Assembly: GCA_002269645.1 (NCBI GenBank)
Contig: NIVC01003656.1
Span: forward strand, 61,011-125,010
Source of the DNA: Macrostomum lignano
Lineage: Eukaryota
Length of the DNA stretch: 64,000 nucleotides
Direction: 5' to 3'
Position numbers and translations under genes: made by a program. The notes beneath the pieces were generated by a model. It had not been told where the DNA came from, made no database searches, and saw only the letters and a program-made list of their open reading frames with translations. Shown here in pieces: positions 5,129 through 64,000 of the stretch (its first letter is position 1; the number at the start of each line of letters is the position of its first letter).

Positions 5129-5261
5129 AATGAGTGAGAATGACACATGAAAACTTTGGGATATACGATGGTCCAGCAACAGAGGATCTGCAGGGGAGGG
5201 CGGAGCCTGGGAATCTGGGACAACAACAAAGCAGGTAAAAAATCGCCCCTCAGCGGCAGAC

Positions 5262-5996: not shown

Positions 5997-6256
5997 GCCT
6001 GACTGCCTGAAAGTTTTCCAATCAATGAAGGTCAAATCTTCAAAGTTTAAATGGAAGAAAAAAGCAAAAGAAAAAAGCATAGTAGAGTTTATATGCCTAA
6101 TAAGAAATAAAATAAGGGCCACTATACACTTATGTGAGTCCATGTGTGTGCATATGATTGTATACATATATATATATATATATATATGCACTTGTGTGCC
6201 TACTTAGAGAAGTTGCTAGAATAGGCAATAATGCCTGTTGCTAGTTGTGTAATAAT

Positions 6257-36922: not shown

Positions 36923-38228
36923 AAACTGACCTCAGATGACTGTGGTTGAGACTGACCTCAGATGGCTGATTGAGACTGACCTCAGATGACTGTGGTTGAG
37001 ACTGACCTCAGATGGCTGATTGAGACTGACCTCAGATGACTGTGGTTGAGACTGACCTAAGATGACTGATTGAGACTGACCTCAGATGACTGTGGTTGAG
37101 ACCGACCTCAGATGGCTGATTGAGACTGACCTAAGATGACTGTGGTTGAGACTGACCTCAGATGGCTGATTGAGACCGACCTAAGATGACTGATTGAGAC
37201 TGACCTCAGATGACTGTGGTTGAGACTGACCTCAGATGGCTGATTGAGACTGACCTCAGATGGCTGATTGAGACTGACCTCAGATGGCTGATTGAGACTG
37301 ACCTCAGATGGCTGATTGAGACTGACCTCAGATGGCTGATTGAGACTGACCTCAGATGGCTGATTGAGACTGACCTAAGATGACTGGTTGCGACTGACCT
37401 AAGATGACTGTGGTTGAGACTGACCTTAGATGACTGATTGAGACTGACCTAAGATGACTGATTGAGACTGACCTCAGATGATTGTGGTTGAGACTGACCT
37501 CAGATGACTGTGGTTGAGACTGACTTCAGATGGCTGATTGAGACTGACCTCAGATGATTGTGGTTGAGACTGACTTCAGATGGCTGATTGAGACTAACCT
37601 CAGATGACTGATTGAGACTGACCTCAGATGGCTGATTGAGACTGACCTCAGATGGCTGATTGAGACTGACCTCAGATGATTGTGGTGGAGACTGACCTCA
37701 GATGACTGTGGTGGAGACTGACCTCAGATGATTGTGGTTGAGACTGACTTCAGATGGCTGATTGAGACTGACCTAAGATGACTGATTGAGACTGACCTCA
37801 GATGGCTGATTGAGACTGACCTCAGATGGCTGATTGAGACTGACCTCAGATGATTGTGGTGGAGACTGACCTCAGATGACTGTGGTGGAGACTGACCTCA
37901 GATGATTGTGGTGGAGACAGACCTCAGATGACTGTGGTGGAGACTGACCTCAGATGACTGTGGTGGAGACTGACCTCAGATGACTGATTGAGACAGACCT
38001 CAGATGAATGTGGTGGAGACAGACCTCAGATGACTGTGGTGGAGACAGACCTCAGATGGCTGATTGAGACTGACCTCAGATGACTGATTGAGACTGACCT
38101 CAGATGGCTGATTGAGACTGACCTCAGATGATTGTGGTGGAGACTGACCTCAGATGACTGTGGTGGAGACTGACCTCAGATGACTGTGGTGGAGACAGAC
38201 CTCAGATAACTGTGGTGGAGACAGACAT
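36923..38228. repeat. Mixed 24/26-bp minisatellite (GAGACTGACCTCAGATG + GCTGATT or ACTGTGGTT)
   Basis: A constant 17-nt core interspersed with two alternative tails. Confidence 0.95.
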
Positions 38229-42000: not shown

Positions 42001-45000
42001 CTACTGAGGACGCTGCACAGCCAGACAGGGGGCCAGGCTGGCCAGGTGCGGCGGCAATACAAAGAGGCTCCAATTGCCAAAGTCGCGCAGCTGCACGGAG
42101 CAGCCGAGGTCGATCAGCAGCAGCTGCAGCGGCGCAGCGGCAGTCCAGTCGGTGATCAGGCGGACCCTGTAGGCCTCCAAAGCGAATCCGTTGCTGCGAA
42201 GACCCAACAGGCAGGTCCGGCCGGCCGGCTGTGGCCGGCTCAGCTGGACGCCAATGTTCAGCTGCAGCAGCTGCCTGGCCGCCTTGCGCAAGCTGGCAAA
42301 CTGCCGGCCAAACTCGTCCGCCCTCGGATGGATGAATTCGTCCGAGCCAGCCGGACAGACGAAACCGGACGACGTCGATGGATAGACTGGCGGCGGACGA
42401 GATTGAGCGGCCGAGCTGTTGGCCAGACGCAGCAGCTGCTGGCTGGTGTACACAGTGCGAGCCGGCCGGCTGATGGCCTGCAGAGCGGCCGGGTGGACGG
42501 CCACCCGGTGCAGCGGGCCGCTGCATGGCCGGCAGCTGCGGCGGAACCGGACAACCGGCGACACGGCCAGGCGGTACCGAGCCAGCGGCAGCCGGAACTC
42601 GCGGCCGGGTCGGCAGGCGAGAAGACAGGCCAGGCTGGCGGCCGCAGCCGTGGCGGCCGGGGCAGCGATTTCCGGCCGGACTCGGCGACAATCGCCAGCC
42701 GGAAGCAGGCGGACAATGCCGACATCCACAAGGAGGAGGCGCACCTGTCCGACTGGCTGGTCCGGCCTGCACGGCAGCACCTGGCCGCGGCGCCACGTCG
42801 CGGAACCAGCTGGATAGCGGACCACGCACAAGTCGCCGGGGCGCAGGGGGCAGAGCTCATCCACTGCTGCAGCCGGCAGGGCGAGATCGCTGGCTCGCAC
42901 AAACTGAACAGAGCTCCCCGACTTCGAATTTGGGTCACTGAGGCTAACAGAAGCGGGCTGGTTAACTTCTTCATCTCCGGCAAGTTCGCTTTCAGCTTCA
43001 CTTTTAGTCTCGAATTCAAACTTGGATTTGGCACTCGCGTTGAAGATTCTCCGCTGGCAGAGGCGCCAGTTCTTGGATATGTTCAGCTTCTTCAGCTTCG
43101 ACTTGATGATCTGTCTCAGATTTCTTTCGAAAGAGTCAAAAGACACTTCATCTGGACTATCATTGTCTCCATCAGTCCAGCCTTCATCGGCCGAGCCGAT
43201 TTCACAATTAGTCTCAGCTTCATCTTTAACTGAAGCTTCTTTACCATTGGTCTCGGCTGGGTCATCCTTCTTCATCAGAGCCTCCTGATCATCTCCAGCT
43301 TCCTCCGAACCCCGATCACTCTCTTCAGCAACAAGCTCTTCATCTTCTCCAGCAGTTTCTCTCGAGCTCTGAGCATTCTCGTTGGCATCTGACTCCTCAT
43401 AGTCTACAGCTTCCTCAGAAACCTGAGCACTCTCTTCAGCAACAAGCTCTTCATCTTCTCCAGCAGTTTCTCTCGAGCTCTGAGCATTCTCGTTGGCATC
43501 TGACTCCTCATAGTCTACAGCTTCCTCAGAAACCTGAGCACTCTCTTCAGCAACAAGCTCTTCATCTTCTCCAGCAGTTTCTCTCGAGCTCTGAGCATTC
43601 TCGTTGGCATCTGACTCCTCATAGTCTACAGCTCCTTCAGAAAACTGAGCACTCTCTTCAGCAACAAGCTCTTCATCTTCTCCAGCAGTTTCTCTCGAGC
43701 TCTGAGCATTCTCGTTGGCATCTGACTCCTCATAGTCTACAGCTTCCTCAGAAACCTGAGCACTCTCTTCAGCAAGAAGCTCTTCATCTTCTCCAGCAGT
43801 TTCTCTCGAGCTCTGAGCATTCTCGTTGGCATCTGACTCCTCATAGTCTACAGCTTCCTCAGAAACCTGAGCACTCTCTTCAGCAACAAGCTCTTCATCT
43901 TCTCCAGCAGTTTCTCTCGAGCTCTGAGCATTCTCGTTGGCATCTGACTCCTCATAGTCTACAGCTTCCTCAGAAACCTGAGCACTCTCTTCAGCACAAG
44001 CCTCCTCATCAACTATAGCTTCCCCCAAACTTTGAGCATTCTCTTCGGAACCAACTTCCTCAGCACCCAAACATTCATCGCTGAAATCTTTCGCCTGTCT
44101 TTCAACATTTTCTTCAGCACTGGCAGCTTCATCGTCTTCAGCCGCATTATTTCCAGATTCTTCTGCATCGGTCCCGGCTTTCTCTTCTCCTTCAGAGACG
44201 TTAATGGAAGCATGGCCATTCCTGTGCTTGTCAACTAATTCAGTCGTCTGCGTTTCAGCCCCGACTCGAGCTGGCTCACATTCTTCGTCGCTTTCTGCTC
44301 CGCACTCGTCAATTAAATCTCCTGTCGCCTCATCATCTATGTCTTCATCCGCATCTAATCGATCCGCCTCAGCTTCCTGCTCCGCATCGAACTGTTCCGC
44401 TTCCGCCTCATCCAAGGCGTCCAGCATTGCGTCTGCTTCTGCATCTTCCTCGCGCTCCAGTTCATCAAAGTCGGCCTCCTCTTGAGCTTCAACTTCGTCT
44501 ACTCTGGCTTCGTCTTCAGCTTCCGCTAGCATCGCGGACTCCTCTTCGGCCAAGTCGGCCAGGGCTTCCGTTTCAGCCTCGGCCAGCGCCAGCCGGGCCT
44601 CAAATTCGGCAGTCCGGGAGGCTTCGTCCTCGTCGACGGCCGCGGCCAGAGCCCAGCCAAGACGGTCGGCCGCTTCCGCCCGAGACGCCGGCAGCAGGCT
44701 GAGAAACAGGCGCGACACGCTGCCATCCGGCTGTCCGGTCCACTCCACGGCTTGCACCGCGGCGGCGAAACAATTTGGACCCTCCGGATACAGTCGGGCG
44801 TCGGGATCGGAGTCTGGCAGGTCGCCAGCCGGTACAGCGGTTGGCAGGTAGTCGGCAAACAGGCTAGAAACATCGCCGAAATCCGGCTCCTCTGCACTGT
44901 TCAGCCCGGCCTTGCTGCTGTTGGAGCAGCGCGGACCGGTGAGGGAGAGCAGCGGCAAGACCGGCTGAACACCGTCCGGCAGCAGAAAGAGCTCAACCAG

Positions 45001-46866
45001 CGGCGGCGCCGAATTACTCAAGCTAGACTCCTGGTCGAGGGTCGACAGCGCGAATGCCGGTCCGAGGCTGTTCAGCGGGGCAGCTGAACAGCGCTGGACA
45101 GCGCCGGCCAGGCAGCACTTGTAGGCCAGCGGAGGCGCCAGTTTGACCAGTTTAGCTGGCGCCGGCCGCATCAGAGACAGCGGAGCGGCCACGGTGAGGC
45201 CCAGATCGACTAGGCGGACCAGCCAATGGCGCTTGCTGATGAGACGCTGGCGCACAAGTCCGCGCGCCCAGGCGCCATCATGCCAGGCCAGACAGGGCGA
45301 ACCGTTGGCGTAATGGTCCCGGCCAATCGCTGGACAGTTGGTGCCGCAATCCGGAGCCGGAATTTTGGCCAAACACTCGGCCAGTTCAACGGCAGCACTG
45401 GCGTCTGCATCCAGCTGGACAGTCAGACGGGGCAGGCGGTCGGCGCGCAGCAGGCGACAGGCGGCCCGGCCGGAAACCCGATTTACTAGCGGAATCTGCC
45501 TGGCGTAGCCGCTCATTGAATCGGCGACGGAGGCGGCTGCGGCGACGGCGGCGGCAGAGGCGTCCGCGGAAGCGGCAACGGCGTTCGGCGGACGCCGCGG
45601 GCTGACCGCTGACAGGCGAACGCGCCACGGCGGCGGCTCAGCGGCGGAGGACGATGACAGCACGCGATGCACCAGCAAGTTCTGTCCGACTAGAGACGCC
45701 GGGTCGGGCTCGTCAACAGCCAGGCAAGGCACGGAGCTGGCGGGGGCGGTGTAGAACTCCGGACAGACTGAGCGGAGCGGCGGCGGGAAAATTTCCCCAA
45801 AAGGCGGGCGACTCCGAATGGTCCTACCGGAGTCCACGTGCGTCAGGGTGACCACGTCTGAGTCGCTTGAGGCCTGGAGTTTCACTAAGCAGCGCAGGTA
45901 GCCTTGAGACACTGGGTTTTGGCTGAGCGCCAGATGATGCCGGCAGACGCAAAGCTGGCCGGGAGCGAGGCGCCGCCTGAAGGCCTGCAGACTCGGCTCC
46001 AGGGCCGGCGGCACAGGGCCAGCGTAGGCAGCGGCCATCAGCTGTCCGAGCTTGGCCGAGTTGGTCAGGCCGTGCGGCAGCCGCAGACAGTAGCAGTTGT
46101 CAGATGACATGTACAGCCTGCAGGTGACGCCGTCGACATCAGGCCAGGGCACCGGGTCAGCATTCGACAGTCCAACGCGCTCGATGAGATCGACAGTGAC
46201 AGGCCAGCACTGCAGCAGGCTGAGCAGGTCGCAGCCGGTGTCCGCAATGCTGACGCCCTGCACGCTGTGCCGCGAAGATTCCAAACTGGCGTCGCCGCTA
46301 ACCCGGAAGCCGGTCAGCTTCAGCCGGACTCGCCGACTACCCAGCAGGGCGGCGGCCAGGTCGGGCGGGCAGGCCGGGATGGCCAGGCGGTAGGCGAGCC
46401 GCGGCACGCCGGCCAGCCAGTCGGGCAGGGGCAGCCAAGCGTCGGGATCGCGCCGCTTCAAGCCAGAGTCGACGCAGGAGGCGCCGCCGCCGCTGCAGCG
46501 AAAGAACCTGGCAACCACTGCGTCTGCATCAGCGTCGCGCCAGACTCCGCAGGCCAGGATGCCTGGCGGAGGCTGAGGCAAAGACTGTCGGTCAGTCGAC
46601 GCCGATTTGTCGACCAAGTCGCGCAGAATGTCGCCAACAAGATTGCGAGTGTCGGCGTCGGAGAGCAGCGCGACAAAACAGCTTCCGTTGGAGTCGATGT
46701 GAACAAGTTCGGCATCGGCGTCGATAGCGGCAGCGACGGCGGCTGCAGCCACCGTAGCTGGCAGGGTCGGGTGCGGCAGCGCTGACTGACAGGCTGATGA
46801 CAGCTGGGCGGCTCGCTTCTTGCCGCGACCACGCGTAGCCGACGAAATGGCGCCAGCGGTGGATGT
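42001..46866 (-). CDS. TDRD-like: Multi-Tudor-domain (extended Tudor/TDRD-like) protein, one ~4.9-kb exon; the ATG-containing 5' exon is not identified
   Basis: Four Tudor-like units: PGQLCVC...VTLTHVDSG, SPCLAWHDGAWARGLV...VRLVDLG...LAYKCCLAG, PGDLCVVRY...WRRGQV...LLVDVG, AGRTCLL...YRVRL...LLIDLG. The ORF-track start is TTG, preceded by a polypyrimidine tract and TGCAG acceptor at 46867. Confidence 0.8.
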   Translation of the reverse strand, partial: TSTAGAISSATRGRGKKRAAQLSSACQSALPHPTLPATVAAAAVAAAIDADAELVHIDSNGSCFVALLSDADTRNLVGDILRDLVDKSASTDRQSLPQPPPGILACGVWRDADADAVVARFFRCSGGGASCVDSGLKRRDPDAWLPLPDWLAGVPRLAYRLAIPACPPDLAAALLGSRRVRLKLTGFRVSGDASLESSRHSVQGVSIADTGCDLLSLLQCWPVTVDLIERVGLSNADPVPWPDVDGVTCRLYMSSDNCYCLRLPHGLTNSAKLGQLMAAAYAGPVPPALEPSLQAFRRRLAPGQLCVCRHHLALSQNPVSQGYLRCLVKLQASSDSDVVTLTHVDSGRTIRSRPPFGEIFPPPLRSVCPEFYTAPASSVPCLAVDEPDPASLVGQNLLVHRVLSSSSAAEPPPWRVRLSAVSPRRPPNAVAASADASAAAVAAAASVADSMSGYARQIPLVNRVSGRAACRLLRADRLPRLTVQLDADASAAVELAECLAKIPAPDCGTNCPAIGRDHYANGSPCLAWHDGAWARGLVRQRLISKRHWLVRLVDLGLTVAAPLSLMRPAPAKLVKLAPPLAYKCCLAGAVQRCSAAPLNSLGPAFALSTLDQESSLSNSAPPLVELFLLPDGVQPVLPLLSLTGPRCSNSSKAGLNSAEEPDFGDVSSLFADYLPTAVPAGDLPDSDPDARLYPEGPNCFAAAVQAVEWTGQPDGSVSRLFLSLLPASRAEAADRLGWALAAAVDEDEASRTAEFEARLALAEAETEALADLAEEESAMLAEAEDEARVDEVEAQEEADFDELEREEDAEADAMLDALDEAEAEQFDAEQEAEADRLDADEDIDDEATGDLIDECGAESDEECEPARVGAETQTTELVDKHRNGHASINVSEGEEKAGTDAEESGNNAAEDDEAASAEENVERQAKDFSDECLGAEEVGSEENAQSLGEAIVDEEACAEESAQVSEEAVDYEESDANENAQSSRETAGEDEELVAEESAQVSEEAVDYEESDANENAQSSRETAGEDEELLAEESAQVSEEAVDYEESDANENAQSSRETAGEDEELVAEESAQFSEGAVDYEESDANENAQSSRETAGEDEELVAEESAQVSEEAVDYEESDANENAQSSRETAGEDEELVAEESAQVSEEAVDYEESDANENAQSSRETAGEDEELVAEESDRGSEEAGDDQEALMKKDDPAETNGKEASVKDEAETNCEIGSADEGWTDGDNDSPDEVSFDSFERNLRQIIKSKLKKLNISKNWRLCQRRIFNASAKSKFEFETKSEAESELAGDEEVNQPASVSLSDPNSKSGSSVQFVRASDLALPAAAVDELCPLRPGDLCVVRYPAGSATWRRGQVLPCRPDQPVGQVRLLLVDVGIVRLLPAGDCRRVRPEIAAPAATAAAASLACLLACRPGREFRLPLARYRLAVSPVVRFRRSCRPCSGPLHRVAVHPAALQAISRPARTVYTSQQLLRLANSSAAQSRPPPVYPSTSSGFVCPAGSDEFIHPRADEFGRQFASLRKAARQLLQLNIGVQLSRPQPAGRTCLLGLRSNGFALEAYRVRLITDWTAAAPLQLLLIDLGCSVQLRDFGNWSLFVLPPHLASLAPCLAVQRPQ
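43327..43992 (-). repeat. Coding 111-bp (37-aa) acidic tandem repeat x6 inside the Tudor ORF
   Basis: EESAQVSEEAVDYEESDANENAQSSRETAGEDEELVA repeated six times with at most 2 aa changes. Confidence 0.95.
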
Positions 46867-47527
46867 CTGCAATCGTTAAATAAGGGGAAAAATATTTTCA
46901 GAATCAAATATAAAAAATTTGTGGCTCTTCAAATGCATTGCATTGCATACTTCAATTATTAATAAAACTCTTTATTATCGGCTGTGAGAATGAATCAACA
47001 AAAATGCAAGGTGTTTTTGCACCCCATACTACAGCCCAGACATTGCGTCTTGCAATATTTCTTTTATTTTTTACCCTGAACAAAAACTTTCTGGCCAACT
47101 AAAACTTGATAGCCTGATACTATGATTCTACTTTTCAAGAAAAAGAGAAAAAATCTTATTTAAGAGCTAAAAGACCAAAAAACAAATCAAAAGAAAGAGC
47201 TTTTTAAACAAATAGTTAATTGAAATCAAAGACTAAAAAAATTGTACACACCCTTTAGATATGCTTGTATAAATTCAATGTTATTCATTGTTATTCAATG
47301 CCAAGGAGATTACGTCACTGACTGATGGTTTGTTTTGTTGCTACAGTTGATATTGTTAAATTTAGCAAGAAGTCTAAATAAATTTGGGACACCAGAAGTA
47401 TGCAGGAATTTTCCATGAAAAAGGCTACTTTCCTGATTATCAGGCTATTTTTTAATATCAATATAAAGTATTCAATGCTTTTAAGTCAAGCATTTTTGTT
47501 GAAATTAATACTGATGCATCATGTCAA

Positions 47528-48313
47528 GGCTCATTCCATATAAGATGGACATATTTGGAAAATAGAAAAAAGTCAATATTTTTGCTTGCCATTGCCTTAT
47601 TAGCCTATTTTTTTACCAAATGTTTATATTGTGCAATATATACAATCTAAGAATAAAGGAATGGTAAAATGTTGGATTAGTATGTTATCAATTGGCAAAA
47701 AGTCATTTTTGTAAAAATTTGGACATTTTTCGAAGCAAAAGACATCATTAAGATTTTGTACCTTTTAAAAACAAATAGAAAGCTTTTGAAGGTTGAAACA
47801 AACTATAGATAAAAGTATAGTACTTGGATTATCAGATAAAAGCATTGGTGACCAAATAATCTATTATATTTTTAATGTTTTAGTACCTCAAAGTTACTGA
47901 ATTGACAGAAAAAAATATGTTACGACCATAATGTTACGACCATAAGGCTGCCTTTTCTTTTGTATCTTTGTTGCCTTTTGAGTTTATATATTCTAATAAA
48001 AGAGTATGATTTCTAAAGATGTTCTTAGTCAAATTTTAAAAATGTATTGCAAAATATCAAAAATGAAAAATGTTATAAGACTTTTACCTTTTAGTTTCTA
48101 TATGTCAAAAATCCTGTCGTTACGACCATAAGTGTTATTTAAGGTTTAATAGCATCTATACTAATGATGATATCTATATGAAACTCTATAAATATATTCT
48201 AGACAAAATAATCTTTCATTTAAAATATTGGTTTAGTATATTCTATTATTAGATTTCATTTTATAAGTAAAAATAACCTGTCATGTTATGACCATGCTTA
48301 TATGGAATGAGCC
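47528..48313 (+). mobile_element. Non-autonomous DNA transposon (MITE), copy 1, 786 bp, 17-bp TIR GGCTCATTCCATATAAG, 4-bp TSD TCAA
   Basis: TCAA|GGCTCATTCC...GGAATGAGCC|TCAA, with internal repeated GTTACGACCATA motifs. Confidence 0.9.
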
Positions 48314-49049: not shown

Positions 49050-49665
49050 GAGTGGTCTTGTTTAAGCCAGGCATTTCCTTCTTGCAGTGATTTTAGTTAC
49101 ACACTAATTTTTTCACTATGCTGAATAACAAAGAAGTAAAAAGCAGAGCATTATTTGGTTTTTTGTGAAAGCAAGGGAGGCGACAAGTGGAAATTCTTTG
49201 CAAGGTACAAGCAATGTATGGTGAATGTGCACTATCAAAAACCATGGTTAACAAGTAGGTCCAGCGCTTTGAAGACAGCTGGGAGACAGTTGATGTCTTG
49301 CCCTTTTAGACTTAATTATGCAAAGTTGATGGTCTATAACTTCTTGAGTAGGCTTCTATCAAGCTGCAAAGCTGTCATAAGTTACAATGTGGCTTGTAAG
49401 CTATCAAGACACTTTCACCAAGACAAGCGACTTCAGTTTGCTATGCCTACATTTCATAACTATGATCACACAGCTGGCTGCCAATTGAAGTCTGGTATCC
49501 ACACCACCAAAGGTACTGGATAAACTGATGGCAAGGCTATTGAACAATTCTAATCAAAGTTATGCTTAATAACAAAGCAAACTAAAATGATAAAGAGGAA
49601 TTGCCAGAACTTCCTAAACTTTGTCTGTAGTAACTGTAACCTTGCTCTTGTGTTCAAAATTAGTA
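49050..49665 (+). pseudogene. Decayed KDZ (Kyakuja-Dileera-Zisupton)-type transposase
   Basis: GLV*ARH ... GGDKWKF ... VISYNVACKL ... FAMPTFHNYDHTAGCQL...GTG*TDGKAIEQF*SKL matches the KDZ core as recalled (C.RH; GE..KY; YD..C.L; P.FH...H...CQ; G.GLTDGE..ER.WS.L), with in-frame stops. Confidence 0.72.
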
Positions 49666-52329: not shown

Positions 52330-53114
52330 GGCTCATTCCATATAAAATGAGGTCATAACATGACAGACTATTTTTACTTATAAAATGAAATATAATAATA
52401 GAATATACTAAACCAATATTTAAATGAAAGATAATTTTGCCAAGAATATTTTTATAGAGTTTCATGTAGATATCATCATTAGTATAGATGCTATTAAACC
52501 TTGAATGGCACTTATGGTCGTAACAACAGGATTTTTGACATATAGAAACTAAAAGGTAAAAGTCTTATAACATTTTTTATTTTTTATATTTTGCAATACA
52601 TTTTTAAAAATTTGACTAACAACATCTTCAGTAATCATACTCTTTTTGTAGAATATATAAACTCAAAAGGCAACAAAGATACAAAAAAAGGCAGCCTTAT
52701 GGTCGTAACATTATGGTCGTAACATATTTTTTTCTGTCAATTCAGTAACTTTGAGGTACCAATATATTAAAAATATAATAGATTATTTGGTCACCAATGC
52801 TTTTATCTGATGATGCAAGTACTATACTTTTATCTATAGTTTGTTTCAACCTTCCAAAGCTTTCTATTTGTTTTTAAAAGGTACACAAACTTAATGATGT
52901 CTTTTGCTTAGAAAAATGTCCAAATTTTTACAAAAATGACTTTTTGCCACTTGATAACATACTAATCCAACATTTTATCATTTATTTATTCTTAGATTGT
53001 AGATATTACACATAAAAAACATTTGGTAAAAAAATTGGCTGATAAGGCAATGGCAAGCAAAAATATTTACTTTTTTCTATTTTCCAAAAATGTTCATCTT
53101 ATATGGAATGAGCC
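52330..53114 (-). mobile_element. MITE copy 2 (reverse complement of 47528-48313), 785 bp, 4-bp TSD CACT
   Basis: CACT|GGCTCATTCC...GGAATGAGCC|CACT. The body aligns in inverted orientation to copy 1 with scattered substitutions. Confidence 0.9.
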
Positions 53115-53885: not shown

Positions 53886-56800
53886 AGTACATGTATTAGG
53901 CTACACGTGTGTGTTCGTGGTCATCGAGCACACGGCTGGCCAGTGACCAGATTTGGATTTGCGCAGCTGCACGTTAACAGACTTTACCCCTTTATTCTGT
54001 TCATGAAAATAAAACTTATACTAAATTTAAAAACTGTAAATTTTTGACGTAACAATCAATAGCTGCCATTGCTTGTGCTTTTCACTAAAATTTTTTGTTT
54101 CACTGTAGATTAAAAATTTTTAAACTTGACTCGTTTAATTAATTCGAAGCCCAGTTACTGTTAGACTGCTTCTAGGTCTCACTGTGTTTATTTTTGTGCC
54201 ATGAATCATAGATATGACTCAAAGGCAACACCAGGGACCAATTTTACGAAGCACTTACCACTGGTAAATAGCCAGCGAACCAGTGGTATTTTTCTATCTC
54301 TATTTTACAAAGCACTGTTTTTCACCACTCATCAACCATCGAATAACCAGATACAATTTTGTGTGGCAGAGGTGCTGAATCCAATTTTACGAAGCTCTTA
54401 TCAGTCTACCACTGGTGAGAAATTGTAGATAAAATCAAGCAAATTTTAATCCACCCTCGAAGCAAGATAAAAGCCAACTAGTACACCTTTTCGCGTTCTA
54501 TTATGATCAAAGTCCAGTTCTAAGAAAACTAGCGAAAATTCAATTTAGACAATTCAGACTGGGTCAACACTTACGGAACATCAATAAAAACAAAACCCAG
54601 TTCAAAACATTCTGTTCATTCTGCCACCGGTCGAAGCAAGTTTAGCCATCGACAAAATTGTCCCAGTCTGATCGAATTGAACACACCATTTTACCTCTGT
54701 TTTGAACAAAGTCTTGTTGGTGGTGTAGACTAGCATTTCGAGCATGGATCTGCTCCAATTTTGGGAAGTCGATGACGAAAGACGCCGGTCTCGTGTTTAT
54801 ATTGAGAGAGCATTCATGAACAACGATGGCTGCTTTGTTCAGCGCTTAGAATGCACTTTGAGGTTTCAATAGTTGGAGCGAATCTAAGTAGCAGAGGAAA
54901 ATATTGTTCGGTGTATCTCGTGTTTGTGCAAAGAATCAAATTGTGACAATCGACTGTCGAGCTGATAATTACATCAAGTGAGTCGTAACTATGCTCGAGG
55001 AAATTGTTGCTATTAAATGCATGTCGTTTTTTCTTGGAAATTATAAACTGAACTTTTGGGCGAAACGCAAAAAAATCTCGAGATTTGTATAGTTTTAATG
55101 CACTATTGAATTTCTAGTTTATGCCAACAACGACACAGCAACAACAATTGCAGCGGCAGCAAGAACAACAACAATAGAGTACGGCTGGTACCACCTCAAA
55201 TGAAATCGGCGTCCTCCAAACGACGTGGCGTACCTTGAAATTAAACGTCACCCTTGGTGCTGGTTTTGGTGGACAGTCAAATAAAATAGCGCCCGCACGA
55301 AAACGAGCCCCTCTCTCATTGAAAATGAAAAATGAAAATGAGCCCAGCAGGACTCTTCAAGACTCAAATCATAACATTTGTTGCACAGGATATGCCCTCT
55401 TACTGTGTACATAAGTGACTTCTTACAGTTCCGGGGGGTTCGAGAACTCCATCAGGGCCAATATACGAGCTAATAGGTTATATATAAATCATTTTTTGAG
55501 ATGCAAGGAAAATCTAAGCTTGCTGCATGTTATTTGCGTTCCTCCCGGTGTTCGCGAAAGATGCTGGGCATAAACAAATTGCCGTTAGTACCTAGCCGTT
55601 ATCAAGTGCTTGCTGCGGTGTCTCATTTGCTCTCATCCACTCCAGCCCAATAAGACGACACCGCTAGCGCTGCGATTTATTATCCATCTGTATGCCCTCC
55701 TGCAGTCCCTATTAGATTTCATCGCCCGTGTGCTCCAGGAAGGGATGCGGATTTCTTGAGCAGAAGATCGGACCCAGGCCGGGAGGAGGCTGAGTAAATT
55801 AGCGATGCCGCATTGATAATTGCTGCGCCACTTCTTGTTTTATCTTAATCCACCGATGTCTTTTTTATCGGCGACTCGCATCCTCCCTCCTCGCTTGCTT
55901 TTCAGGCTAAAATACAGCTCGCTCAAACTTCTAGCTCGGAGCCTTGAGCAGGCCGCGGAATTGTTTGCGAATTGAGGCTGAGCAGGGAGGAAATGTCTAA
56001 TTTACAGCCCCGGCGTCTCTGGCCCTTTTCAGTTTGCTAAAAAAATTGTACGCGGTCGCAGTTTGCAGCTTTTTTTCACGATATGCCAGGCCCTATTGAG
56101 CGGATCACGCGTTCCGGCCGAGATTCCAGCCACAGGGATTATAATCCCTCTATCTTCCCCAGACCATAGGTGTCCCCATGACCTTCGCATCCATGGCGCT
56201 GGCTCGTGCATGGCAGAAGCAAATTTTTGGGAGCCAAATAGAACGAAGTTGCTTGTTTAACTTTTTTCTCTCATCCTCAGGCGAGCTGTCTCTCCCTACC
56301 CTGGTTAATCTTTTCTTCCCGACCGTCTTTCCTGTCAGCCAGCCACACTTTGCAGCCACGCGGCCTCTCGAGTGCCTTAAATAATAATCAGCACTGCATT
56401 GAAATTCTCTTCAGGTTGCCACTGTCAGCAGAGTTTTTCCACAGCTTTGCAGCTGCTTTTCTATTTGCTTCGCTCTCCTGCCCCGCGTCCGACTCAAATA
56501 AATTGAGACCAACTCACGGAGGACACGTCTTCTAAAAAATGCAAGTGAGCACTGGCCTGATGAGCCCGCGTCTATATGGTTCTGAAATCAGCTCGATGCT
56601 TAGAGAAATTTGCTCATGACTGCGCACTGTTTCCTTGCTGCCCCTTGGTTACAGGTTTTTATTGTTCTCCGAGCAGGGACTACTTAAACTAGGGATGGGA
56701 AACCGGCCAAATCATGCAGAAAATATTTGGAAGCTGGTTTTTTCTAGTGCTCCCCAGAATTTATAATTGAATGTAGAAAGCTGGTCTTTCGCCATCCTGT

Positions 56801-57332
56801 ACAGAATCAATCCCGTTACAAGATGCACAACTCGATTTTTGTCAATCTTCATTCTAAGAGGAGTAGTGAGCTTTTTTGTACAGGACCCTTCTTTTTCAAA
56901 GTGTTTTATATAGAGAATTCCTTATAAAAATTTCGTAAGTTTTAGACGACACAGCAGAAGCGGCTACAAGCTTATGTGAATTAGCGGTGATGCTTGTGCA
57001 GAAACCCTAGACAATTTAATAGCGCGTTTGTTGGATCCAGGCGCGTCGCCACCGGGGGGACAGGGGGGACATGTCCCCCCCAGTAAAAGCTTTGGGGGGA
57101 CATGCCAATGCTTTGTCCCCTCCACCCCACCTTGTGAGTCGTTGTGGTAATCAACAAATTTTCTTCAAGGTGCCAAGATATAGCGCTTTCGGCGCCGAAA
57201 TGAGTGCCTGTGGCGCTAAAATGAGTGCCTGCGGCGCTAAAATGAGTGCCTGCGGCGCCAAAAGGAGTGCCTGCGGCGCTAAAATGAGTGCCTGCAGCGC
57301 TAAAATGAGTGCCTGCGGCGCTAAAAGGAATG

Positions 57333-58429
57333 TGTAGCGGACACATGTACTTTTGACAGAGCCAGCCACTGCTGCTCAAACTGTCTATGGCCCAAATAAA
57401 CTCGAGCCGTAAAAGGCCCAGCCGCAGCACTTTATTAAAAGACAAGCGGTCTTCATCTCGCCGCACGCGAGCCGCTTCAGTGGTGAGCCCGACTATACTC
57501 AGCCGTAGCTGAGTATTTCAAGCTTTTCGCCCGCTGCCTCGTCACAGTTTCGGCCACCAGGTCTTCCGAGTCCAGCCAAAGCCATCGTCCACCTCGATCC
57601 CTAAATCCGGCTCAGCGCTTCTGACTGGAGCCGCATCAAAGTGACCATGACCGATTCCTGGTCACTGCGGTTATGCAGTAGGTGAGCAGTGCACTCCGGG
57701 TAAGGGGCTCTCGCCTGCCAAAGTTTGCTTGCAACGCCCCACCCGACGCTGCGACGTCGATGCGGCTCACCTCGGCAACGCCTTGTCCCAGCAGCACAGG
57801 CGGACACGTCGGACGAAGCATCGGTGCACTTTTCTGCGCTGCAGGCCCCACCACGCTACCGACGGATCACCACAATGGCAATGGCATACGTACCAGCAGC
57901 ATCATCATCAGCTCAACCATCCACTGCTGCCGCTGCCCTCGGCCTCGAGGATGCTGGTGTCTATGACCTCAACTGGCCCACAACGCCACCGGCTCGCAGC
58001 TCGATCTATCAGCAGCAAAGTGCTCACACTTTTGGACAGTCCCTGAACACCCGCCATCGAGCCAGCCTCTGCACGCTTTCGATTTCTGTGCTACTAACAG
58101 TTTCACATTACCAATTTAGACGCCCCAACCCGGTCATCCACTGCCGGTGACCCTTTTCTAACCCAGTCGTTTCCATTGCGTTAGTGGCAAAGTAATCGCA
58201 GCCGACCCAGCCGTTGCCACAGCAGCTGAGCTCCCGACGAGCACAATGCAAGAGCAACATTGTCTGGCTCTGGGGGGAGTTGTGTAGCGGACACATGTAC
58301 TTTTGACAGAGCCAGCCACTGCTGCTCAAACTGTCTATGGCCCAAATAAACTCGAGCCGTAAAAGGCCCAGCCGCAGCACTTTATTAAAAGACAAGCGGT
58401 CTTCATCTCGCCGCACGCGAGCCGCTTCA
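57333..58429 (+). mobile_element. Intact miniature non-autonomous LTR retrotransposon (TRIM), 1097 bp
   Basis: Identical 147-bp LTRs (57333-57479, 58283-58429) with TGTAGCGG...CCGCTTCA ends. PBS TGGTGAGCCCGAC at 57481, PPT GGGGGGAG at 58272-58279, 4-bp TSD AATG on both sides. No gag/pol recognised. Confidence 0.92.
57481..57493 (+). promoter_or_regulatory. Primer-binding site of the TRIM (tRNA-Trp-like)
   Basis: TGG start 1 nt after the 5' LTR; 12/13 match to the canonical Trp PBS TGGTGACCCCGAC. The host tRNA was not checked. Confidence 0.7.
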
Positions 58430-61369
58430 AATGCCAAAATGAGTGCCTGCAGCGCTAAAATGAGTGCCTGCGGCGCTAAAAGGAATGCCCGTGGCGCCAA
58501 AAGGAGTGCCTGCGGCGCTAAAATGAGTGCCTGCGGCGCTAAAATGAGTGCCTGCGGCGCTAAAATGAGTGCCTGCGACGCTAAAATGAGTGGCTGCGGC
58601 GCTAAAATGAGTGCCTGTGGCGCTAAAATGAGTGCCTGCGGCGCCAAAATGAGTGCCTGCAGCGCTAAAATGAGTGCCTGCGGCGCTAAAAGGAGTGCTA
58701 AAATGAGTGCCTGCAGCGCTAAAATGAGTGCCAGCGGCGCTAAAAGGAATGCCAAAATGAGTGCCTGCAGCGCTAAAATGAGTGCCTGCGGCGCTAAAAG
58801 GAATGCCCGTGGCGCCAAAAGGAGTGCCTGCGGCGCTAAAATGAGTGCCTGCGGCGCCAAAAGGAGTGCCTGGGGTGCCATAATGAGTGCCTGCGGCGCT
58901 AAAATGAGTGCCTGCGGCGCTAAAATGAGTGCCTGCGGCGCTAAAATGAGTGCCTGGGGCGCTAAAATGAATGCCCGTGGCGCCTAAAGGAGTGCCTGCG
59001 GCGCTAAAATGAGTGCCTTCGGCGCTAAAATGGGAGCCTTCGGCGCTAAAATTAGTGCCTGCGGCGCCAAAATGAGTGCCTGCGGCGCTAAAATGAGTGC
59101 CTGCGGCGCCAAAAGGAGTGCCTGCGGCGCTAAAATGAGTGCTTGCGGCGCCAAAAGGAGTGCCTGCGGCGCTAAAATGAGTGCTTGCGGCGCCAAAAGG
59201 AGTGCCTGGGGTGCCAAAATGAGTGCCCGCGGCGCTAAAATCAGTGCCTGTGGCGCTAAAATGAGTGCCTGCGGCGCTAAAAGGAGTGCCTGGGGTGCCA
59301 AAATGAGTGCCCGCGGCGCTAAAATCAGTGCCTGTGGCGCTAAAATGAGTACCTGTGGCGCCAAAAGGAGTGCCTGTGGCGCTAAAATGAGTGCCTGCGG
59401 CGCTAAAAGGAATGCCCGTGGCGCCAAAAGGAGTGCCTGCGGCGCTAAAATGAGTGCCTGCGGCGCTAAAATGAGTGCCTGCGGCGCTAAAATGAGTGCC
59501 TGCGACGCTAAAATGAGTGGCTGCGGCGCTAAAATGAGTGCCTGTGGCGCTAAAATGAGTGCCTGCGGCGCCAAAATGAGTGCCTGCAGCGCTAAAATGA
59601 GTGCCTGCGGCGCTAAAAGGAGTGCTAAAATGAGTGCCTGCAGCGCTAAAATGAGTGCCTGCGGCGCTAAAAGGAGTGCTAAAATGAGTGCCTGCAGCGC
59701 TAAAATGAGTGCCAGTGGCGCTAAAAGGAATGCCAAAATGAGTGCCTGCAGCGCTAAAATGAGTGCCTGCGGCGCTAAAAGGAATGCCAAAATGAGTGCC
59801 TGCAGCGCTAAAATGAGTGCTTGCGGCGCCAAAAGGAGTGCCTGGGGTGCCAAAATGAGTGCCCGCGGCGCTAAAATCAGTGCCTGTGGCGCTAAAATGA
59901 GTGCCTGCGGCGCCAAAAGGAGTGCCTGGGGTGCCAAAATGAGTGCCCGCGGCGCTAAAATGAGTGCCTGCGGCGCTAAAAGGAGTGCCTGGGGTGCCAA
60001 AATGAGTGCCTGCGGCGCTAAAATGAGTGCCTGCGGCGCTAAAATGAGTACCTGTGGCGCCAAAAGGAGTGCCTGTGGCGCCAGAATGAGTGCCAAAATT
60101 TAGTCATGTACATGTGCATGTTGAATTCTTGGCTTTGTCCCCCACCACAAAATCCATGGCCCCTGCCTGGATCAGTAAATAGCAAACAGCTTCACCACAG
60201 TTTTACAGGCGATTGCATAATCAATTGTCTGTCTACCAGCAAGTGGGAAAACTTCACCTGCAGCTTAGCAAACTATCCCCTACATACCAGATGCAGAATC
60301 GAGCCACTGCACATCACACATGGGTCCTGGCAAAATTCAAGGTCTCAGAGAAACCTACTCGTTTCTGTGAATAAATTTTGCTAACGGAGTGTTGAAGATA
60401 TTTGGCAACTGAATCGGGCCTTTAGTATTCACCTGCAATTTTGAATTCTTGATGAGATTTCTGTCTCATTCTATACAATATTGTGGCAACTGGTCAGGTA
60501 GTTTCGCTATTTCTGACTCAACCCGACATTCACGCGAAGAATATTGAGATTTTTGAGCAAACATTGAGTCTTTCGGATTTGTTTAAAAATTTCAACAGAA
60601 ATTTATGCGCACGCAGGGGAACCGACGATGGTGCCGAATTTTTGCTGTCAAATCCAAGAGAGTCTGGATGCCGTCTGCTTCCTAATGGGGAAGTTCCAGT
60701 CACGAGTTGCTGACAGGAGCCTGAGACAATAGTTGAGAAAACAAACATACAGAAACAGAGTCCCAACCAGAGTTCTGTGAGGGGGTTGTGAGACGTGCTG
60801 CCTCACAGCCCGTAAAATTGTAAAGTTGCACAAGTAAATTATAACGCATAAAAAAAAGCATAAATTTGTTTCCAACATTTGGAAAAAGAGCTGACAATTC
60901 AGTTTACCATCCAATCATTTTTGTCGGTTATTAGCTGCTGCTAAATTTTGGCATTCGCAGATCAAGGCTCAGGAGCGATGCACAGCTGCCGTCACCACTC
61001 GCTGCTCATGCAATTCAGAGACAGATCCCATTTCACTCACCGTCCGCAAAAAAGCTACTGAAATTTGATCCTCTCAGATCCTCAAGCTCAAGTATTGACG
61101 GTAAGCAAACACCCGACCTGTCTCATTGTTTCCCAATGTTCATGCCATTGTCTTGCAGCGGCGGTAATCCTTTAAGAAGGTTAGCTCAGGCCGTCCATTC
61201 TCCTGCAGCTGGACTACAGCTGCTGCATCGGCCTCCTTGGTAGATTCATCAGCAGCGGCTGGTAGCGACCTTTAGCCACTTGTCATTGCACTGCTGCACC
61301 TTGCAGATCGACTCTTTTCATTCATTGCGTACTTTTAGGAACACAGTTTAACAGTGTGTTATAACAAAA

Positions 61370-61813: not shown

Positions 61814-63040
61814 TTAATTGTCTGTCAGTGGCTCCGGGAACACCGGCTGCTGCTGCTGTCTCTCGAGAGCTTCGGCTTTCACAGAGGCCGCCTTCTCCAT
61901 CAGGTGCTTCAGCATGTGCTCCTCCAGCTCCTGCTTAGTCAGCAGGCAGCCGCAAATGCAGCGATCCATCGAGCTGTCACCGGCGGAGCTGGTGTCGCTG
62001 GCATCGCTGTCCTCAGTTTTTGACGGCGTTTCAAACTTTTCCGGCTTAACGTCCTGACGCCCTCGCTTGCCTTCCGGCCTGCAGCTGGCTGAATCAAGCA
62101 GGATGTCCTCGATTCTGAACGGATAGGGTTTCGACTGCCGCGGCGTTGAGATCTCGGCCAGTTTGCCCGTTGCAACCGTTGAGTCTTTCGATCTCTTCAG
62201 CGAGCCGCCCGGCGGTTTCGGCTTATGCCAGCGCTTGTGGCTTGCCAGGTTGGCCGGGCAGTTGAACGACTTGTCGCACTCCTCGCATTTGTAGTGGATG
62301 TGCTCGATGCCCGGGCAGCGGTGCTGGGCCAGTTGGAACGCGTCCGGGTACTTCACCGAGCACAGCTGGCAGTCGAAGTCGCCAATCACATTTTTTATCT
62401 TGGCAAGCTGCGCTTTGGTCTCCGGCGTGACGGCCACGAACTTTGACGGCTCGGGGATGTCGGCCGATTGACGGACACCGTCCTTGTCCGTCAGCTTGCG
62501 AATGAGGGTGCCGCTCACCGGGCTTCTGTTGTCGTTGTCGCCGTCCTTCGGCGCCGCTGTTCGACGATTTGCCTTTCGTTTCGGGCCCGCCTGGGACTTT
62601 GGTGGCGGTGGCGGCGGGGGCGGCGGAGGTGGTGGCGGAGGCGGCGGCGGCGGCAGGGGATGCGGCGGTGAATTCGATGGCGATGACTTCAAAGGCAGTT
62701 TGCTGTTCAAGAACTCGTGCATCGTTGATTGCGGCGGTCGCTGCAGAGGAGGTGGCGGCGGAGGGGGAGGCAGCGGCGACGGCAGAGGATGCGGCGGCAT
62801 CAGCGACTGCTGCATCAAGCAGTTCAGGTGCACCATGTTGAGCGGGTCAAGAAACGGCGCGGCAGAAGCGTGCGGATGAAGTCCAGGTGGGAAATTGTAA
62901 GGATGGCAACCGATGTTGGGAAACATCTGCGGTGGCGGCGGTGGCAGCGGCGGAGGCGGCGGAGGCGGAATTCGGCCGAAGCTGCCCTGCTGCAGCCACG
63001 GTGGCCTGCGGCCGAAGTGGGCAAAGTACGGAGCTGTCAT
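61814..63040 (-). CDS. INSM-like: INSM/IA-1 (nerfin/EGL-46) C2H2 zinc-finger transcription factor, intronless, proline-rich N-terminus
   Basis: SPVSGTLIR..., IGDFDCQLCSVKYPDAFQLAQHRCPGIEHIHYKCEECDKSFNCPANLASHKRWHKP is the family's diagnostic finger pair. The first in-frame ATG is at 63040 (the track start is TTG). Confidence 0.92.
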   Translation of the reverse strand: MTAPYFAHFGRRPPWLQQGSFGRIPPPPPPPLPPPPPQMFPNIGCHPYNFPPGLHPHASAAPFLDPLNMVHLNCLMQQSLMPPHPLPSPLPPPPPPPPLQRPPQSTMHEFLNSKLPLKSSPSNSPPHPLPPPPPPPPPPPPPPPPPPKSQAGPKRKANRRTAAPKDGDNDNRSPVSGTLIRKLTDKDGVRQSADIPEPSKFVAVTPETKAQLAKIKNVIGDFDCQLCSVKYPDAFQLAQHRCPGIEHIHYKCEECDKSFNCPANLASHKRWHKPKPPGGSLKRSKDSTVATGKLAEISTPRQSKPYPFRIEDILLDSASCRPEGKRGRQDVKPEKFETPSKTEDSDASDTSSAGDSSMDRCICGCLLTKQELEEHMLKHLMEKAASVKAEALERQQQQPVFPEPLTDN

Positions 63041-64000
63041 GCTGGAGGCTGGAGGCCGGAGGCGGTTGAGGAAGGAAGAGCCTGAACGATCGAGTCGAAA
63101 TTCGATGCGGGTTCGATGCGAGAGCCGACAGGTGATGCAGCTATTTCCGATGGGAGTCCCAGCCTCCGCTCCTCCCAAAGCTCCTGCTCAGGATCCCATT
63201 GGTCGCGGCCTGCCCGCGGACTCAAACTCCCCTCCCCCCTAAGAATTTCTGCTTCTCCCCAGTGTCGGAGCGAGAATGCGAGGCTGCTCAGGCTTTGAGG
63301 GGTAGAGCAGAGATGAAGAATAGCTGGAATTGGAAAACTCTAAGGGGGAGGAGTCTGACTGCGGTCCAGCCAATGCGAGAGCGCTCCCTATACACCCCTA
63401 CAAAGAAATCCCAAATCCTCATCAATATTTCCTTTACAGAGACCAAAGAGACCCCCAACTGTTGGGGCCTGAATTTCATGCTGTGAGCCAAGGCGGGTCA
63501 AACATCGTCAAACACCCATTGGCAGCTCTCATATATTTGCCCGAAGACAATTCAATCTAATTGATTGCGCCTCTCAACTCATTGCTTTTTTCTCACTGCT
63601 CTTCTGCCACGCGACAGAAAATTGACACAACGAAATCTCCAACCTATGAATATACGCTTGTAGTTGATAAATATTTGCACACTCTGTCTGTAGAATTGAA
63701 CAAATCTGATTTTATTTTTAGATTGAAAGAGAAGAGACGGCGCAAGGTGTTATAATTCGGTTGATCAGCTGAATCTGAGCATGAAAGAAGCGGAGTGACT
63801 GTGCGAAGCAATAAATCTTTGTGTGCCATTGATTGGGGAAGTGGCGGTGAATTGCGATCGCTCCAGATCTAGCTGAAAGGCCACCACTACTCAGAATTAA
63901 AAGTGGGGGGGGGGCTATACAAGCTATAAAGGATATATACAGCAAGTGTGTGTTTTATCTACACTGTGCAGAGATTTGTCAGGGCAGGAACTCGCCACCC

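What the first reader, a model, noticed from the sequence alone, without database searches (positions are those of the whole stretch)
57333..58429. Intact, very young TRIM (miniature LTR retrotransposon)
Seen: two 147-bp LTRs identical base for base, TG...CA ends, tRNA-type PBS, PPT and a 4-bp TSD (AATG). The empty-site sequence AAAAGGAATGCCAAAATG still exists elsewhere in the host array (~58742). Known: TRIMs are non-autonomous elements mobilised in trans, well described in plants and reported in few animals, including taeniid tapeworms. Inference: this is a recently active family with an autonomous Gypsy-like partner using the same PBS, and it may be undescribed.
Basis: partly seen in the sequence, partly recalled or inferred. 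Interest (0 to 1): 0.8.

Follow-up and report, generated by a model that had tools for sequence, protein, structure and literature searches.

The report
Young miniature LTR retrotransposon in flatworm
A 1.1-kb protein-less LTR retrotransposon (TRIM-type) sits cleanly inside a 21-bp minisatellite of the flatworm Macrostomum lignano; it is real and recent, but it is an ordinary member of a known class of parasitic DNA, and it was missed so far mainly because earlier annotation settings excluded it.

Summary
Window 57333-58429 is a complete 1,097-bp LTR retroelement. It has two identical 147-bp LTRs (TG...CA) and a 4-bp target-site duplication (AATG). A primer-binding site lies 1 nt after the 5' LTR, and a G-rich polypurine tract lies 3 nt before the 3' LTR. 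An exact 60-nt "empty site" survives elsewhere in the same minisatellite. The 803-bp interior has no Pfam, protein or Rfam match, so the element is non-autonomous.

The window comes from Macrostomum lignano (assembly Mlig_3_7, contig NIVC01000267.1), a free-living flatworm in which LTR retrotransposons make up 21% of the genome.

The PBS TGGTGAGCCCGA matches exactly the published tRNA-Trp PBS consensus of the CsRn1 clade of Ty3/Mdg4 elements. That clade also makes 4-bp duplications and has nine families in M. lignano, so it is the best candidate for the helper. This step is inferred, not shown.

Copy number, other insertions, expression and the helper could not be tested, because no searchable M. 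lignano genome was available. No second copy occurs in about 160 kb of M. lignano DNA. Published M. lignano pipelines would have missed it by design.

Verdict: a real, recent insertion and a new member of a known kind, of modest interest.

The parts
57329..57332 (+). Left copy of the 4-bp target-site duplication (AATG)
   Evidence: Removing one copy restores a 60-mer that is present exactly at 59757.
57333..57479 (+). 5' LTR, 147 bp, TGT...TCA. It carries AATAAA at 57395-57400 and TATTAA/ATTAAA at 57433-57439. No heat-shock-element motif is present.
   Evidence: (D3, 100% identity). Any division into U3/R/U5 is inference only.
57481..57493 (+). Primer-binding site TGGTGAGCCCGAC, 1 nt after the LTR. 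Its first 12 nt match the CsRn1-clade tRNA-Trp PBS consensus TGGTGA[G/C]CCCG[T/A].
   Evidence: unique in the window; PMC2582038.
57495..57516 (+). Perfect 9-bp hairpin ATACTCAGC-CGTA-GCTGAGTAT directly after the PBS. It might act as a leader or packaging structure; this is speculative.
   Evidence: minimum-free-energy and centroid structures. The whole interior is not unusually structured (z = -1.27).
57480..58282 (+). Internal region, 803 bp, 58% G+C, non-coding. The longest ATG ORF is 91 aa (starts at 57875).
   Evidence: No Pfam hit. No protein homolog among 5.8 billion clusters. No Rfam family at E<=1. ORF length.
58272..58279 (+). Polypurine tract GGGGGGAG, 3 nt upstream of the 3' LTR
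   Evidence: The spacing is the same as reported for ta-TRIM.
58283..58429 (+). 3' LTR, identical to the 5' LTR
58430..58433 (+). Right copy of the target-site duplication (AATG)
57190..57332 (.). Left part of the host 21-bp minisatellite (unit GCTAAAATGAGTGCCTGCGGC), interrupted by the insertion
58434..60094 (.). Right part of the host minisatellite (about 79 units). It holds unoccupied paralogous target sites at 58742, 59723 and 59777, and the 60-nt exact match at 59757-59816.

Best explanation
This is a non-autonomous, TRIM-type LTR retrotransposon of Macrostomum lignano.

Proposed mechanism:
- An RNA transcribed from a donor copy was packaged and reverse-transcribed by gag-pol proteins supplied in trans.
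- Minus-strand synthesis was primed by a host tRNA, most likely tRNA-Trp, on the PBS at 57481-57493.
- Plus-strand synthesis was primed from the G-rich PPT at 58272-58279. This regenerated two identical LTRs.
- The helper's integrase joined the CA-3' ends to a 4-bp staggered cut inside a 21-bp minisatellite, which duplicated AATG.

Shown: the complete cis anatomy, the absence of coding capacity, the clean insertion with a surviving empty-site paralog, and the species.

Inferred:
- Mobilisation in trans.
- tRNA-Trp as the primer.
- A Ty3/Mdg4 helper of the CsRn1 clade (sub-claim, confidence about 0.4).
- Pol II transcription from the LTR.
- Membership of a multi-copy family.
For: - Identical 147-bp direct repeats with TG...CA ends, present only twice in 64 kb against 0 expected.
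- AATG/AATG flanks. An exact 60-nt empty-site reconstruction lies at 59757, and the 18-mer lies at 58742, 59723 and 59777. The two-AATG version is absent.
- The insertion is present once, whereas the unoccupied target variant recurs in the array. It has therefore not been spread by array turnover.
- The PBS starts with TGG 1 nt after the LTR. Its 12 nt match exactly the published CsRn1-clade tRNA-Trp PBS consensus, and that clade makes 4-bp TSDs.
- M. lignano has 137 curated LTR-RT families, nearly all Ty3/Mdg4, nine of them in the CsRN1 clade.
- The PPT lies 3 nt before the 3' LTR, as in ta-TRIM.
- No Pfam, protein-homolog or Rfam hit in the interior.
- The species is set by a 100% identical TTL protein, BOX15_Mlig010031g2, and by contig NIVC01000267.1.
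Against: - Only one copy was seen. There is no solo LTR or second element in the window plus 95 kb of other M. lignano loci, so family status is unproven.
Against the vertebrate tRNA-Trp 3' end as I recall it (from memory; one search states only that the consensus, with G or C at this position, is complementary to bovine tRNA-Trp), the PBS would carry one mismatch, G instead of C at position 7.
- Published CsRn1-like LTRs end in AAA or ATA, whereas this one ends in TCA. The clade assignment of the helper is therefore weak.
- The PPT is short (8 nt).
- The length of 1,097 bp exceeds the <1,000-bp TRIM limit of one author.
- The perfect LTR identity could be partly inflated by assembly polishing in a repeat-rich, redundant assembly.
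Confidence: 0.82

Rival explanations
1. It is a one-off internally deleted or recombinant derivative of an autonomous LTR retrotransposon, for example through template switching during one round of reverse transcription. Under this reading it is not a member of a self-propagating TRIM lineage, and full-length elements with the same LTRs exist elsewhere.
For: Only one copy was seen in about 160 kb. LTR retrotransposons make up 21% of this genome, with many young copies. Wudarski et al. mention a 2-kb LTR element, so short derivatives do exist.
Against: None of the 803 internal bases keeps any recognisable gag, pol or integrase remnant, even at Pfam E<=1. Such remnants are usual in simple deletion derivatives. 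The 147-bp LTRs are short for autonomous Ty3/Mdg4 elements (381 bp in PwRn1).
Confidence: 0.15
2. It is an assembly or polishing artefact. Under this reading the element or its second LTR was created, or its LTRs were made identical, by mis-assembly within a minisatellite in a redundant PacBio/Illumina assembly.
For: Mlig_3_7 is acknowledged to be redundant and repeat-rich, and the locus lies inside a tandem array.
Against: Mis-assembly does not produce TG...CA repeats, a correctly placed PBS and PPT, and a 4-bp TSD whose removal restores an exact 60-nt array sequence. At most the perfect LTR identity, and so the age estimate, could be affected.
Confidence: 0.02
3. It is a chance or segmental direct repeat unrelated to retrotransposition, for example a local duplication within the array flank.
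For: The host region is full of tandem and higher-order repeats.
Against: The 147-bp repeat and the 803-bp interior have no similarity to the 21-bp array or to anything else in the window. All five cis hallmarks of LTR elements are present in the right order and orientation.
Confidence: 0.01

Closest known systems
ta-TRIM of taeniid tapeworms (Koziol et al. 2015, PMC4558846)
   Same: The host is also a flatworm. Total size is about 1 kb. The interior is non-coding. LTRs are TG...CA. The PPT lies 3 nt before the 3' LTR. The TSD is 4 bp. A Ty3/Mdg4-type helper is presumed.
   Different: LTRs are 147 bp here against about 198 bp, and the interior is 803 bp against about 590 bp. The PBS is of tRNA-Trp type 1 nt from the LTR, against tRNA-Leu 4 nt from the LTR. 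ta-TRIMs were reported as specific to taeniids and absent from other flatworms. ta-TRIM LTR pairs are 2-27% diverged, whereas these are identical.
PbTRIM of the red harvester ant (Zhou & Cahan 2012, PMC3532108)
   Same: It is an animal TRIM with LTRs of 152-184 bp, a 4-bp TSD, a non-coding interior, and many young copies with near-identical LTRs.
   Different: PbTRIM is 480-781 bp, has a tRNA-Leu PBS, prefers AT-rich ATAT targets, and is abundant with solo LTRs. The copy number here is unknown.
CsRn1 clade of Ty3/Mdg4 retrotransposons (CsRn1, PwRn1, AgCR; PMC2582038), as the candidate helper and not as the family of the element itself
   Same: The PBS consensus TGGTGA[G/C]CCCG[T/A] for tRNA-Trp is identical to 57481-57492. 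TSDs are 4 bp. LTRs begin with TGT. The clade is present in flatworms, with nine families in M. lignano.
   Different: Those elements are about 5 kb, encode Gag (CHCC motif) and Pol, have LTRs of about 380-470 bp, and their LTRs end in AAA or ATA rather than TCA. Nothing in this element is homologous to their proteins.
Pol III-promoter TRIMs (Cassandra, Helenus, Ajax; Kojima 2024, PMC10886601)
   Same: They are miniature LTR elements with a PBS and a PPT. Animal Helenus also makes 4-bp TSDs.
   Different: Their LTRs carry a 5S rRNA- or tRNA-derived segment. The Rfam scan of both LTRs found nothing at E<=1, so this element would be a conventional 'TRIMp2'.

Membership tests
TRIM (terminal-repeat retrotransposon in miniature) | Two short direct terminal repeats (about 100-250 bp) with TG...CA ends | tested here: met
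   147 bp, 100% identical, TGT...TCA
TRIM (terminal-repeat retrotransposon in miniature) | [quoted passage not shown] | tested here: inconclusive
   TGGTGAGCCCGAC lies 1 nt after the LTR, and its first 12 nt match the published tRNA-Trp PBS consensus of CsRn1-like elements. No M. lignano tRNA sequence was available for direct pairing.
TRIM (terminal-repeat retrotransposon in miniature) | [quoted passage not shown] | tested here: met
   GGGGGGAG at 58272-58279, 3 nt from the LTR. It is short but correctly placed.
TRIM (terminal-repeat retrotransposon in miniature) | No coding capacity for gag or pol | tested here: met
   No Pfam hit in any sense-strand fragment at E<=1. No protein homologs. The longest ATG ORF is 91 aa.
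TRIM (terminal-repeat retrotransposon in miniature) | Miniature size | tested here: inconclusive
   The element is 1,097 bp. That is above the '<1000 bp' limit used by Kojima 2024. It is similar to ta-TRIM (about 990 bp), and a 1,192-bp ant element has been treated as PbTRIM-related. The threshold depends on the author.
TRIM (terminal-repeat retrotransposon in miniature) | Flanking target-site duplication as proof of integration | tested here: met
   AATG/AATG with an exact 60-nt empty-site paralog
TRIM (terminal-repeat retrotransposon in miniature) | Multi-copy dispersed family, with solo LTRs, mobilised in trans | not testable with these tools
   No searchable M. lignano genome was available. 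There were 0 further copies in 160 kb, 0 hits in metagenome contigs, and no gene calls overlapping other copies.
Dependent of a CsRn1-clade Ty3/Mdg4 helper | Same PBS (tRNA-Trp) and same TSD length as the helper | tested here: met
   12 of 12 nt match the published consensus, and the TSD is 4 bp. This fits the clade but is not exclusive to it.
Dependent of a CsRn1-clade Ty3/Mdg4 helper | LTR termini or leader shared with an autonomous element in the same genome | not testable with these tools
   [quoted passage not shown] Published CsRn1-like LTRs end in AAA or ATA, not TCA.
TRIMp3 (Cassandra/Helenus/Ajax) | 5S rRNA- or tRNA-derived Pol III promoter inside the LTR | tested here: not met
   Rfam scan of 56500-59000 at E<=1 gave no match. 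ARAGORN found no tRNA.
ta-TRIM family of taeniids | About 198-bp LTRs and a tRNA-Leu PBS 4 nt from the LTR | tested here: not met
   The LTRs are 147 bp and the PBS is of tRNA-Trp type 1 nt from the LTR

The most novel reading that the evidence does not exclude
The element is one copy of a currently mobile TRIM family in M. lignano, trans-mobilised by a CsRn1-clade Ty3/Mdg4 element through a shared tRNA-Trp PBS. M. lignano is a laboratory flatworm with an intact PIWI pathway, established transgenesis and known stress-inducible LTR elements. It would then offer the first experimentally tractable animal pair of a TRIM and its helper. As with ta-TRIM in Echinococcus stem cells, its LTRs might also drive abundant non-coding transcripts.
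Probability: 0.25. Interest if true: 0.5.

Novelty: new member of a known kind. Interest (0 to 1): 0.3.

Why it matters
TRIMs are well known in plants. In animals they have been described only in a few lineages: hymenopterans, taeniid tapeworms, bivalves, and some fish, mollusc and nemertean Pol III variants. For almost none of them is the helper element known.

A perfectly intact copy in M. lignano, whose PBS points to a specific helper clade, would extend TRIMs to free-living flatworms. It would also give a system in which trans-mobilisation could actually be tested, because transgenesis and heat-inducible LTR elements exist in this species.

There is a practical point as well. The published M. 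lignano repeat annotations exclude this class by design. LTRharvest was run with -mindistltr 1000 and -mintsd 5, and unclassified elements were dropped. DARTS is seeded on RT domains. Part of the 'unclassified' repeat fraction of this genome may therefore be of this kind.

In itself, one more non-autonomous LTR element in a genome that is 21% LTR retrotransposon is not surprising.

Tried and rejected
1. Protein-level search for other copies.
- The internal 141-aa ORF gave no hit among 5.8 billion protein clusters.
- A 1.8-kb six-frame concatenate timed out.
- A 527-aa concatenate of the longest LTR and internal frames gave no hit.
- Conclusion: no gene call anywhere overlaps a related copy, so loci could not be fetched this way.

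2. Exact-pattern scans of JGI metagenome contigs, one with the LTR-end plus PBS and one with the LTR start. Both gave 0 hits.

3. Fetching the allelic or homeologous site to score presence or absence.
- The neighbouring zinc-finger gene (61817-63040, minus strand) is not on record, and neither is the minisatellite ORF.
- The exhaustive representative search with the zinc-finger protein returned only proline-rich or zinc-finger look-alikes. It did not return the M. lignano protein.

4. Looking for copies, for the same PBS and for tRNA genes in four other M. lignano loci (L001-L004, 95 kb). None were found.

5. Rfam scan for a captured small RNA or a Pol III promoter. None was found, so the Cassandra/Helenus/Ajax type is rejected.

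6. Global RNA structure of the interior. It is not significant (z = -1.27). Only a local 9-bp hairpin after the PBS stands out.

7. The bacterial-type promoter and terminator scan is irrelevant for a eukaryote.

8. Supplementary consensus sequences of the 137 M. lignano LTR-RT families are not held.

9. An alternative 149-bp LTR boundary starting at 57331 was rejected, because it gives no TSD (GGAA against AATG).

10. A literature string search for the PBS found nothing relevant.

Full report
**1. What is in the sequence**

Reading 57000-59000 and running the repeat finder (family D3) show one direct repeat, 57331-57479 = 58281-58429, 149 nt at 100% identity. Taking the canonical TG...CA ends, the LTRs are 57333-57479 and 58283-58429. 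Each is 147 bp and they are identical. The two extra matching bases are the TG of the upstream AATG, which happens to equal the TG before the 3' LTR. A 149-bp boundary gives no target-site duplication and was rejected. A 40-nt LTR probe with up to 3 mismatches finds only these two sites in 64 kb, against none expected.

The other cis features are all in place:
- The flanks are AATG (57329-57332) and AATG (58430-58433).
- One base after the 5' LTR comes TGGTGAGCCCGAC (57481-57493), which is unique in the window.
- Three bases before the 3' LTR lies GGGGGGAG (58272-58279).
- The element is 1,097 bp with an 803-bp interior.

**2. Is the insertion real?**

The host is a 21-bp minisatellite (57190-57326 and 58436-60094). 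AATG occurs about 0.8 times per unit, so the 4-bp match alone is weak evidence.

The decisive test is reconstruction of the empty site. Joining 30 nt of left flank, including one AATG, to 30 nt of right flank gives a 60-mer that is present exactly at 59757. The version that retains both AATG copies does not exist in the window.

The element therefore entered a pre-existing variant repeat junction and duplicated 4 bp, as an integrase does. The occupied site is unique, while the unoccupied variant recurs. The insertion has thus not been spread by array turnover, which fits a recent event.

Zero differences in 147 bp gives a 95% upper bound of about 1.0-1.4 Myr at 0.7-1 x 10^-8 substitutions per site per year (rate from PMC4558846). 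The insertion is young, but not necessarily 'very' young. Consensus polishing in this redundant assembly could also inflate the identity.

**3. Coding and RNA content**

The longest ATG ORF on the sense strand is 91 aa.
- Three internal ORFs gave no Pfam hit, and all sense-strand fragments gave none at E<=1.
- The 141-aa ORF gave no homolog among 5.8 billion protein clusters. A 527-aa concatenate of the longest LTR and internal frames on both strands also gave none.
- Rfam found nothing at E<=1 over 56500-59000, and ARAGORN found no tRNA.

The LTRs therefore do not carry a 5S- or tRNA-derived Pol III promoter of the Cassandra/Helenus/Ajax kind. The interior as a whole is not unusually structured (z = -1.27). 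A perfect 9-bp hairpin (57495-57516) follows the PBS directly.

The LTR contains AATAAA (57395) and TATTAA/ATTAAA (57433) but no heat-shock element. One plausible layout is a TATA-like box near 57395, a transcription start about 30 nt downstream, ATTAAA as the poly(A) signal inside a short R, and a U5 of about 20 nt. This layout is inference only.

**4. Whose genome**

The TTL-family ORF at 10530-11561 (minus strand) is 100% identical to Macrostomum lignano BOX15_Mlig010031g2. Its gene lies on NIVC01000267.1 of assembly GCA_002269645.1, Mlig_3_7. The window is the reverse complement of roughly 34.6-98.6 kb of that contig.

In M. lignano, LTR retrotransposons make up 21% of the genome and simple or tandem repeats 15% (PMC5730564). 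This matches the many minisatellites in the window.

**5. Which helper?**

The literature on CsRn1-like Ty3/Mdg4 elements of trematodes and mosquitoes gives their PBS as 5'-TGGTGA(G/C)CCCG(T/A)-3', complementary to the 3' end of tRNA-Trp. It also reports 4-bp TSDs as a clade hallmark (PMC2582038). Positions 57481-57492 (TGGTGAGCCCGA) match that consensus at 12 of 12 positions.

M. lignano has 137 curated LTR-RT families, almost all Ty3/Mdg4: Mag 78, Gmr1/Osvaldo 40, CsRN1 9 and Mdg3/Micropia 2 (PMC12801592). The best-supported inference is therefore trans-mobilisation by a CsRn1-clade element primed by tRNA-Trp.

There are caveats:
- Published CsRn1-like LTRs end in AAA or ATA, whereas this one ends in TCA.
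- Use of tRNA-Trp need not be exclusive to that clade.
- No M. lignano tRNA was available for direct pairing.

I put this sub-claim at about 0.4.

**6. What could not be tested**

None of the tools holds a searchable M. lignano genome.
- No further copy, solo LTR or identical PBS was found in the window plus four other M. lignano loci, about 160 kb in all.
- Metagenome scans were empty.
- Attempts to fetch the allelic or homeologous site through neighbouring genes failed, because those genes are not on record.

Copy number, insertion polymorphism, expression, piRNA targeting and the identity of the helper all remain open. The main rival reading is a one-off internally deleted derivative rather than a propagating TRIM lineage. 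It cannot be excluded. It is disfavoured by the total absence of gag or pol remnants and by the very short LTRs.

**7. Comparison with known families**

Structurally the element meets the TRIM criteria: short TG...CA LTRs, a PBS, a PPT, a TSD and no coding capacity. Its 1,097 bp sits at the upper edge of the size definitions. One definition is <1,000 bp. ta-TRIM is about 990 bp, and a 1,192-bp ant element has been treated as PbTRIM-related.

It is not a ta-TRIM. Those have 198-bp LTRs and a tRNA-Leu PBS 4 nt from the LTR, and they were reported to be restricted to taeniids. It is also not a Pol III-type TRIM.

No paper in the held library describes a TRIM in Macrostomum or any other free-living flatworm. 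The published pipelines explain why:
- LTRharvest was run with -mindistltr 1000 and -mintsd 5. The LTR starts here are 950 bp apart and the TSD is 4 bp. Unclassified elements were also discarded.
- The later DARTS survey starts from RT domains.

**8. Verdict**

The structural interpretation is supported: an intact, recently inserted miniature non-autonomous LTR retrotransposon. The claims about an active family and its helper are plausible but unproven.

It is a new member of a known kind, in a genome where such elements are expected. Its interest is modest. It lies mainly in the specific, testable link to a CsRn1-type helper in an experimentally tractable flatworm.

Noticed in passing
window 47528-48293 and 52351-53114: A long inverted repeat. 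The arms are about 770 nt and 92-95% complementary, and they enclose about 4 kb of AT-rich DNA (about 30% G+C). A degenerate 122-aa ORF lies at 49155-49523. It looks like a long-TIR transposon or an inverted-repeat retroelement of about 5.6 kb.
   Followed up: partly
window 14878-33612: An 18.7-kb minisatellite of 626 copies of a 30-bp unit at 98% identity. The NCBI annotation places a 1,360-aa 'protein' in it (L004 3038-7117), which is probably a spurious repeat ORF.
   Followed up: no
window 100-5128; 35205-35934; 36925-38212; 39287-41445: Four further large tandem arrays, with units of 62, 29, 24 and 16 bp, lie within the 64 kb. The window is unusually dense in minisatellites, in line with the 15% tandem-repeat content reported for this genome.
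   Followed up: no
window 57071-57337, 58337-58987 and 59009-60103 (+ strand): The 21-bp array is open in one frame (GAKMSAC repeats). An ATG ORF that starts upstream of the array at 57071 is ended by the TAG at 57335-57337, formed by bases 3-5 of the 5' LTR (TGTAG). Element plus TSD is 1,101 bp (3 x 367), so the same frame resumes after the insertion. No such protein is on record, so it is probably not a gene.
   Followed up: partly
window 57056-57130 and 60125-60150: The palindrome GGGGGGACATGTCCCCCC lies just upstream of the 21-bp array. Similar motifs, GCTTTGTCCCC(T)CCACC, lie on both sides of the array. This suggests that the minisatellite sits inside another repeat unit.
   Followed up: no
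window 58252-58272 versus LTR positions 25-45 (57357-57377 and 58307-58327): The 21 nt just upstream of the PPT are 86% complementary to a segment near the start of the LTR (I2/I3). The BLAST E-value is about 6, so this may be chance.
   Followed up: no
window 42001-46872 (-), 61814-63178 (-), 10530-11561 (-), 5250-6191 (-): Host genes around the element: a 1,623-aa Tudor-domain ORF with a 111-bp coding repeat (43292-44010), a proline-rich C2H2 zinc-finger ORF 3.4 kb downstream of the element, a TTL-family gene and an IDO gene. The zinc-finger gene appears not to be in the protein collections.
   Followed up: partly
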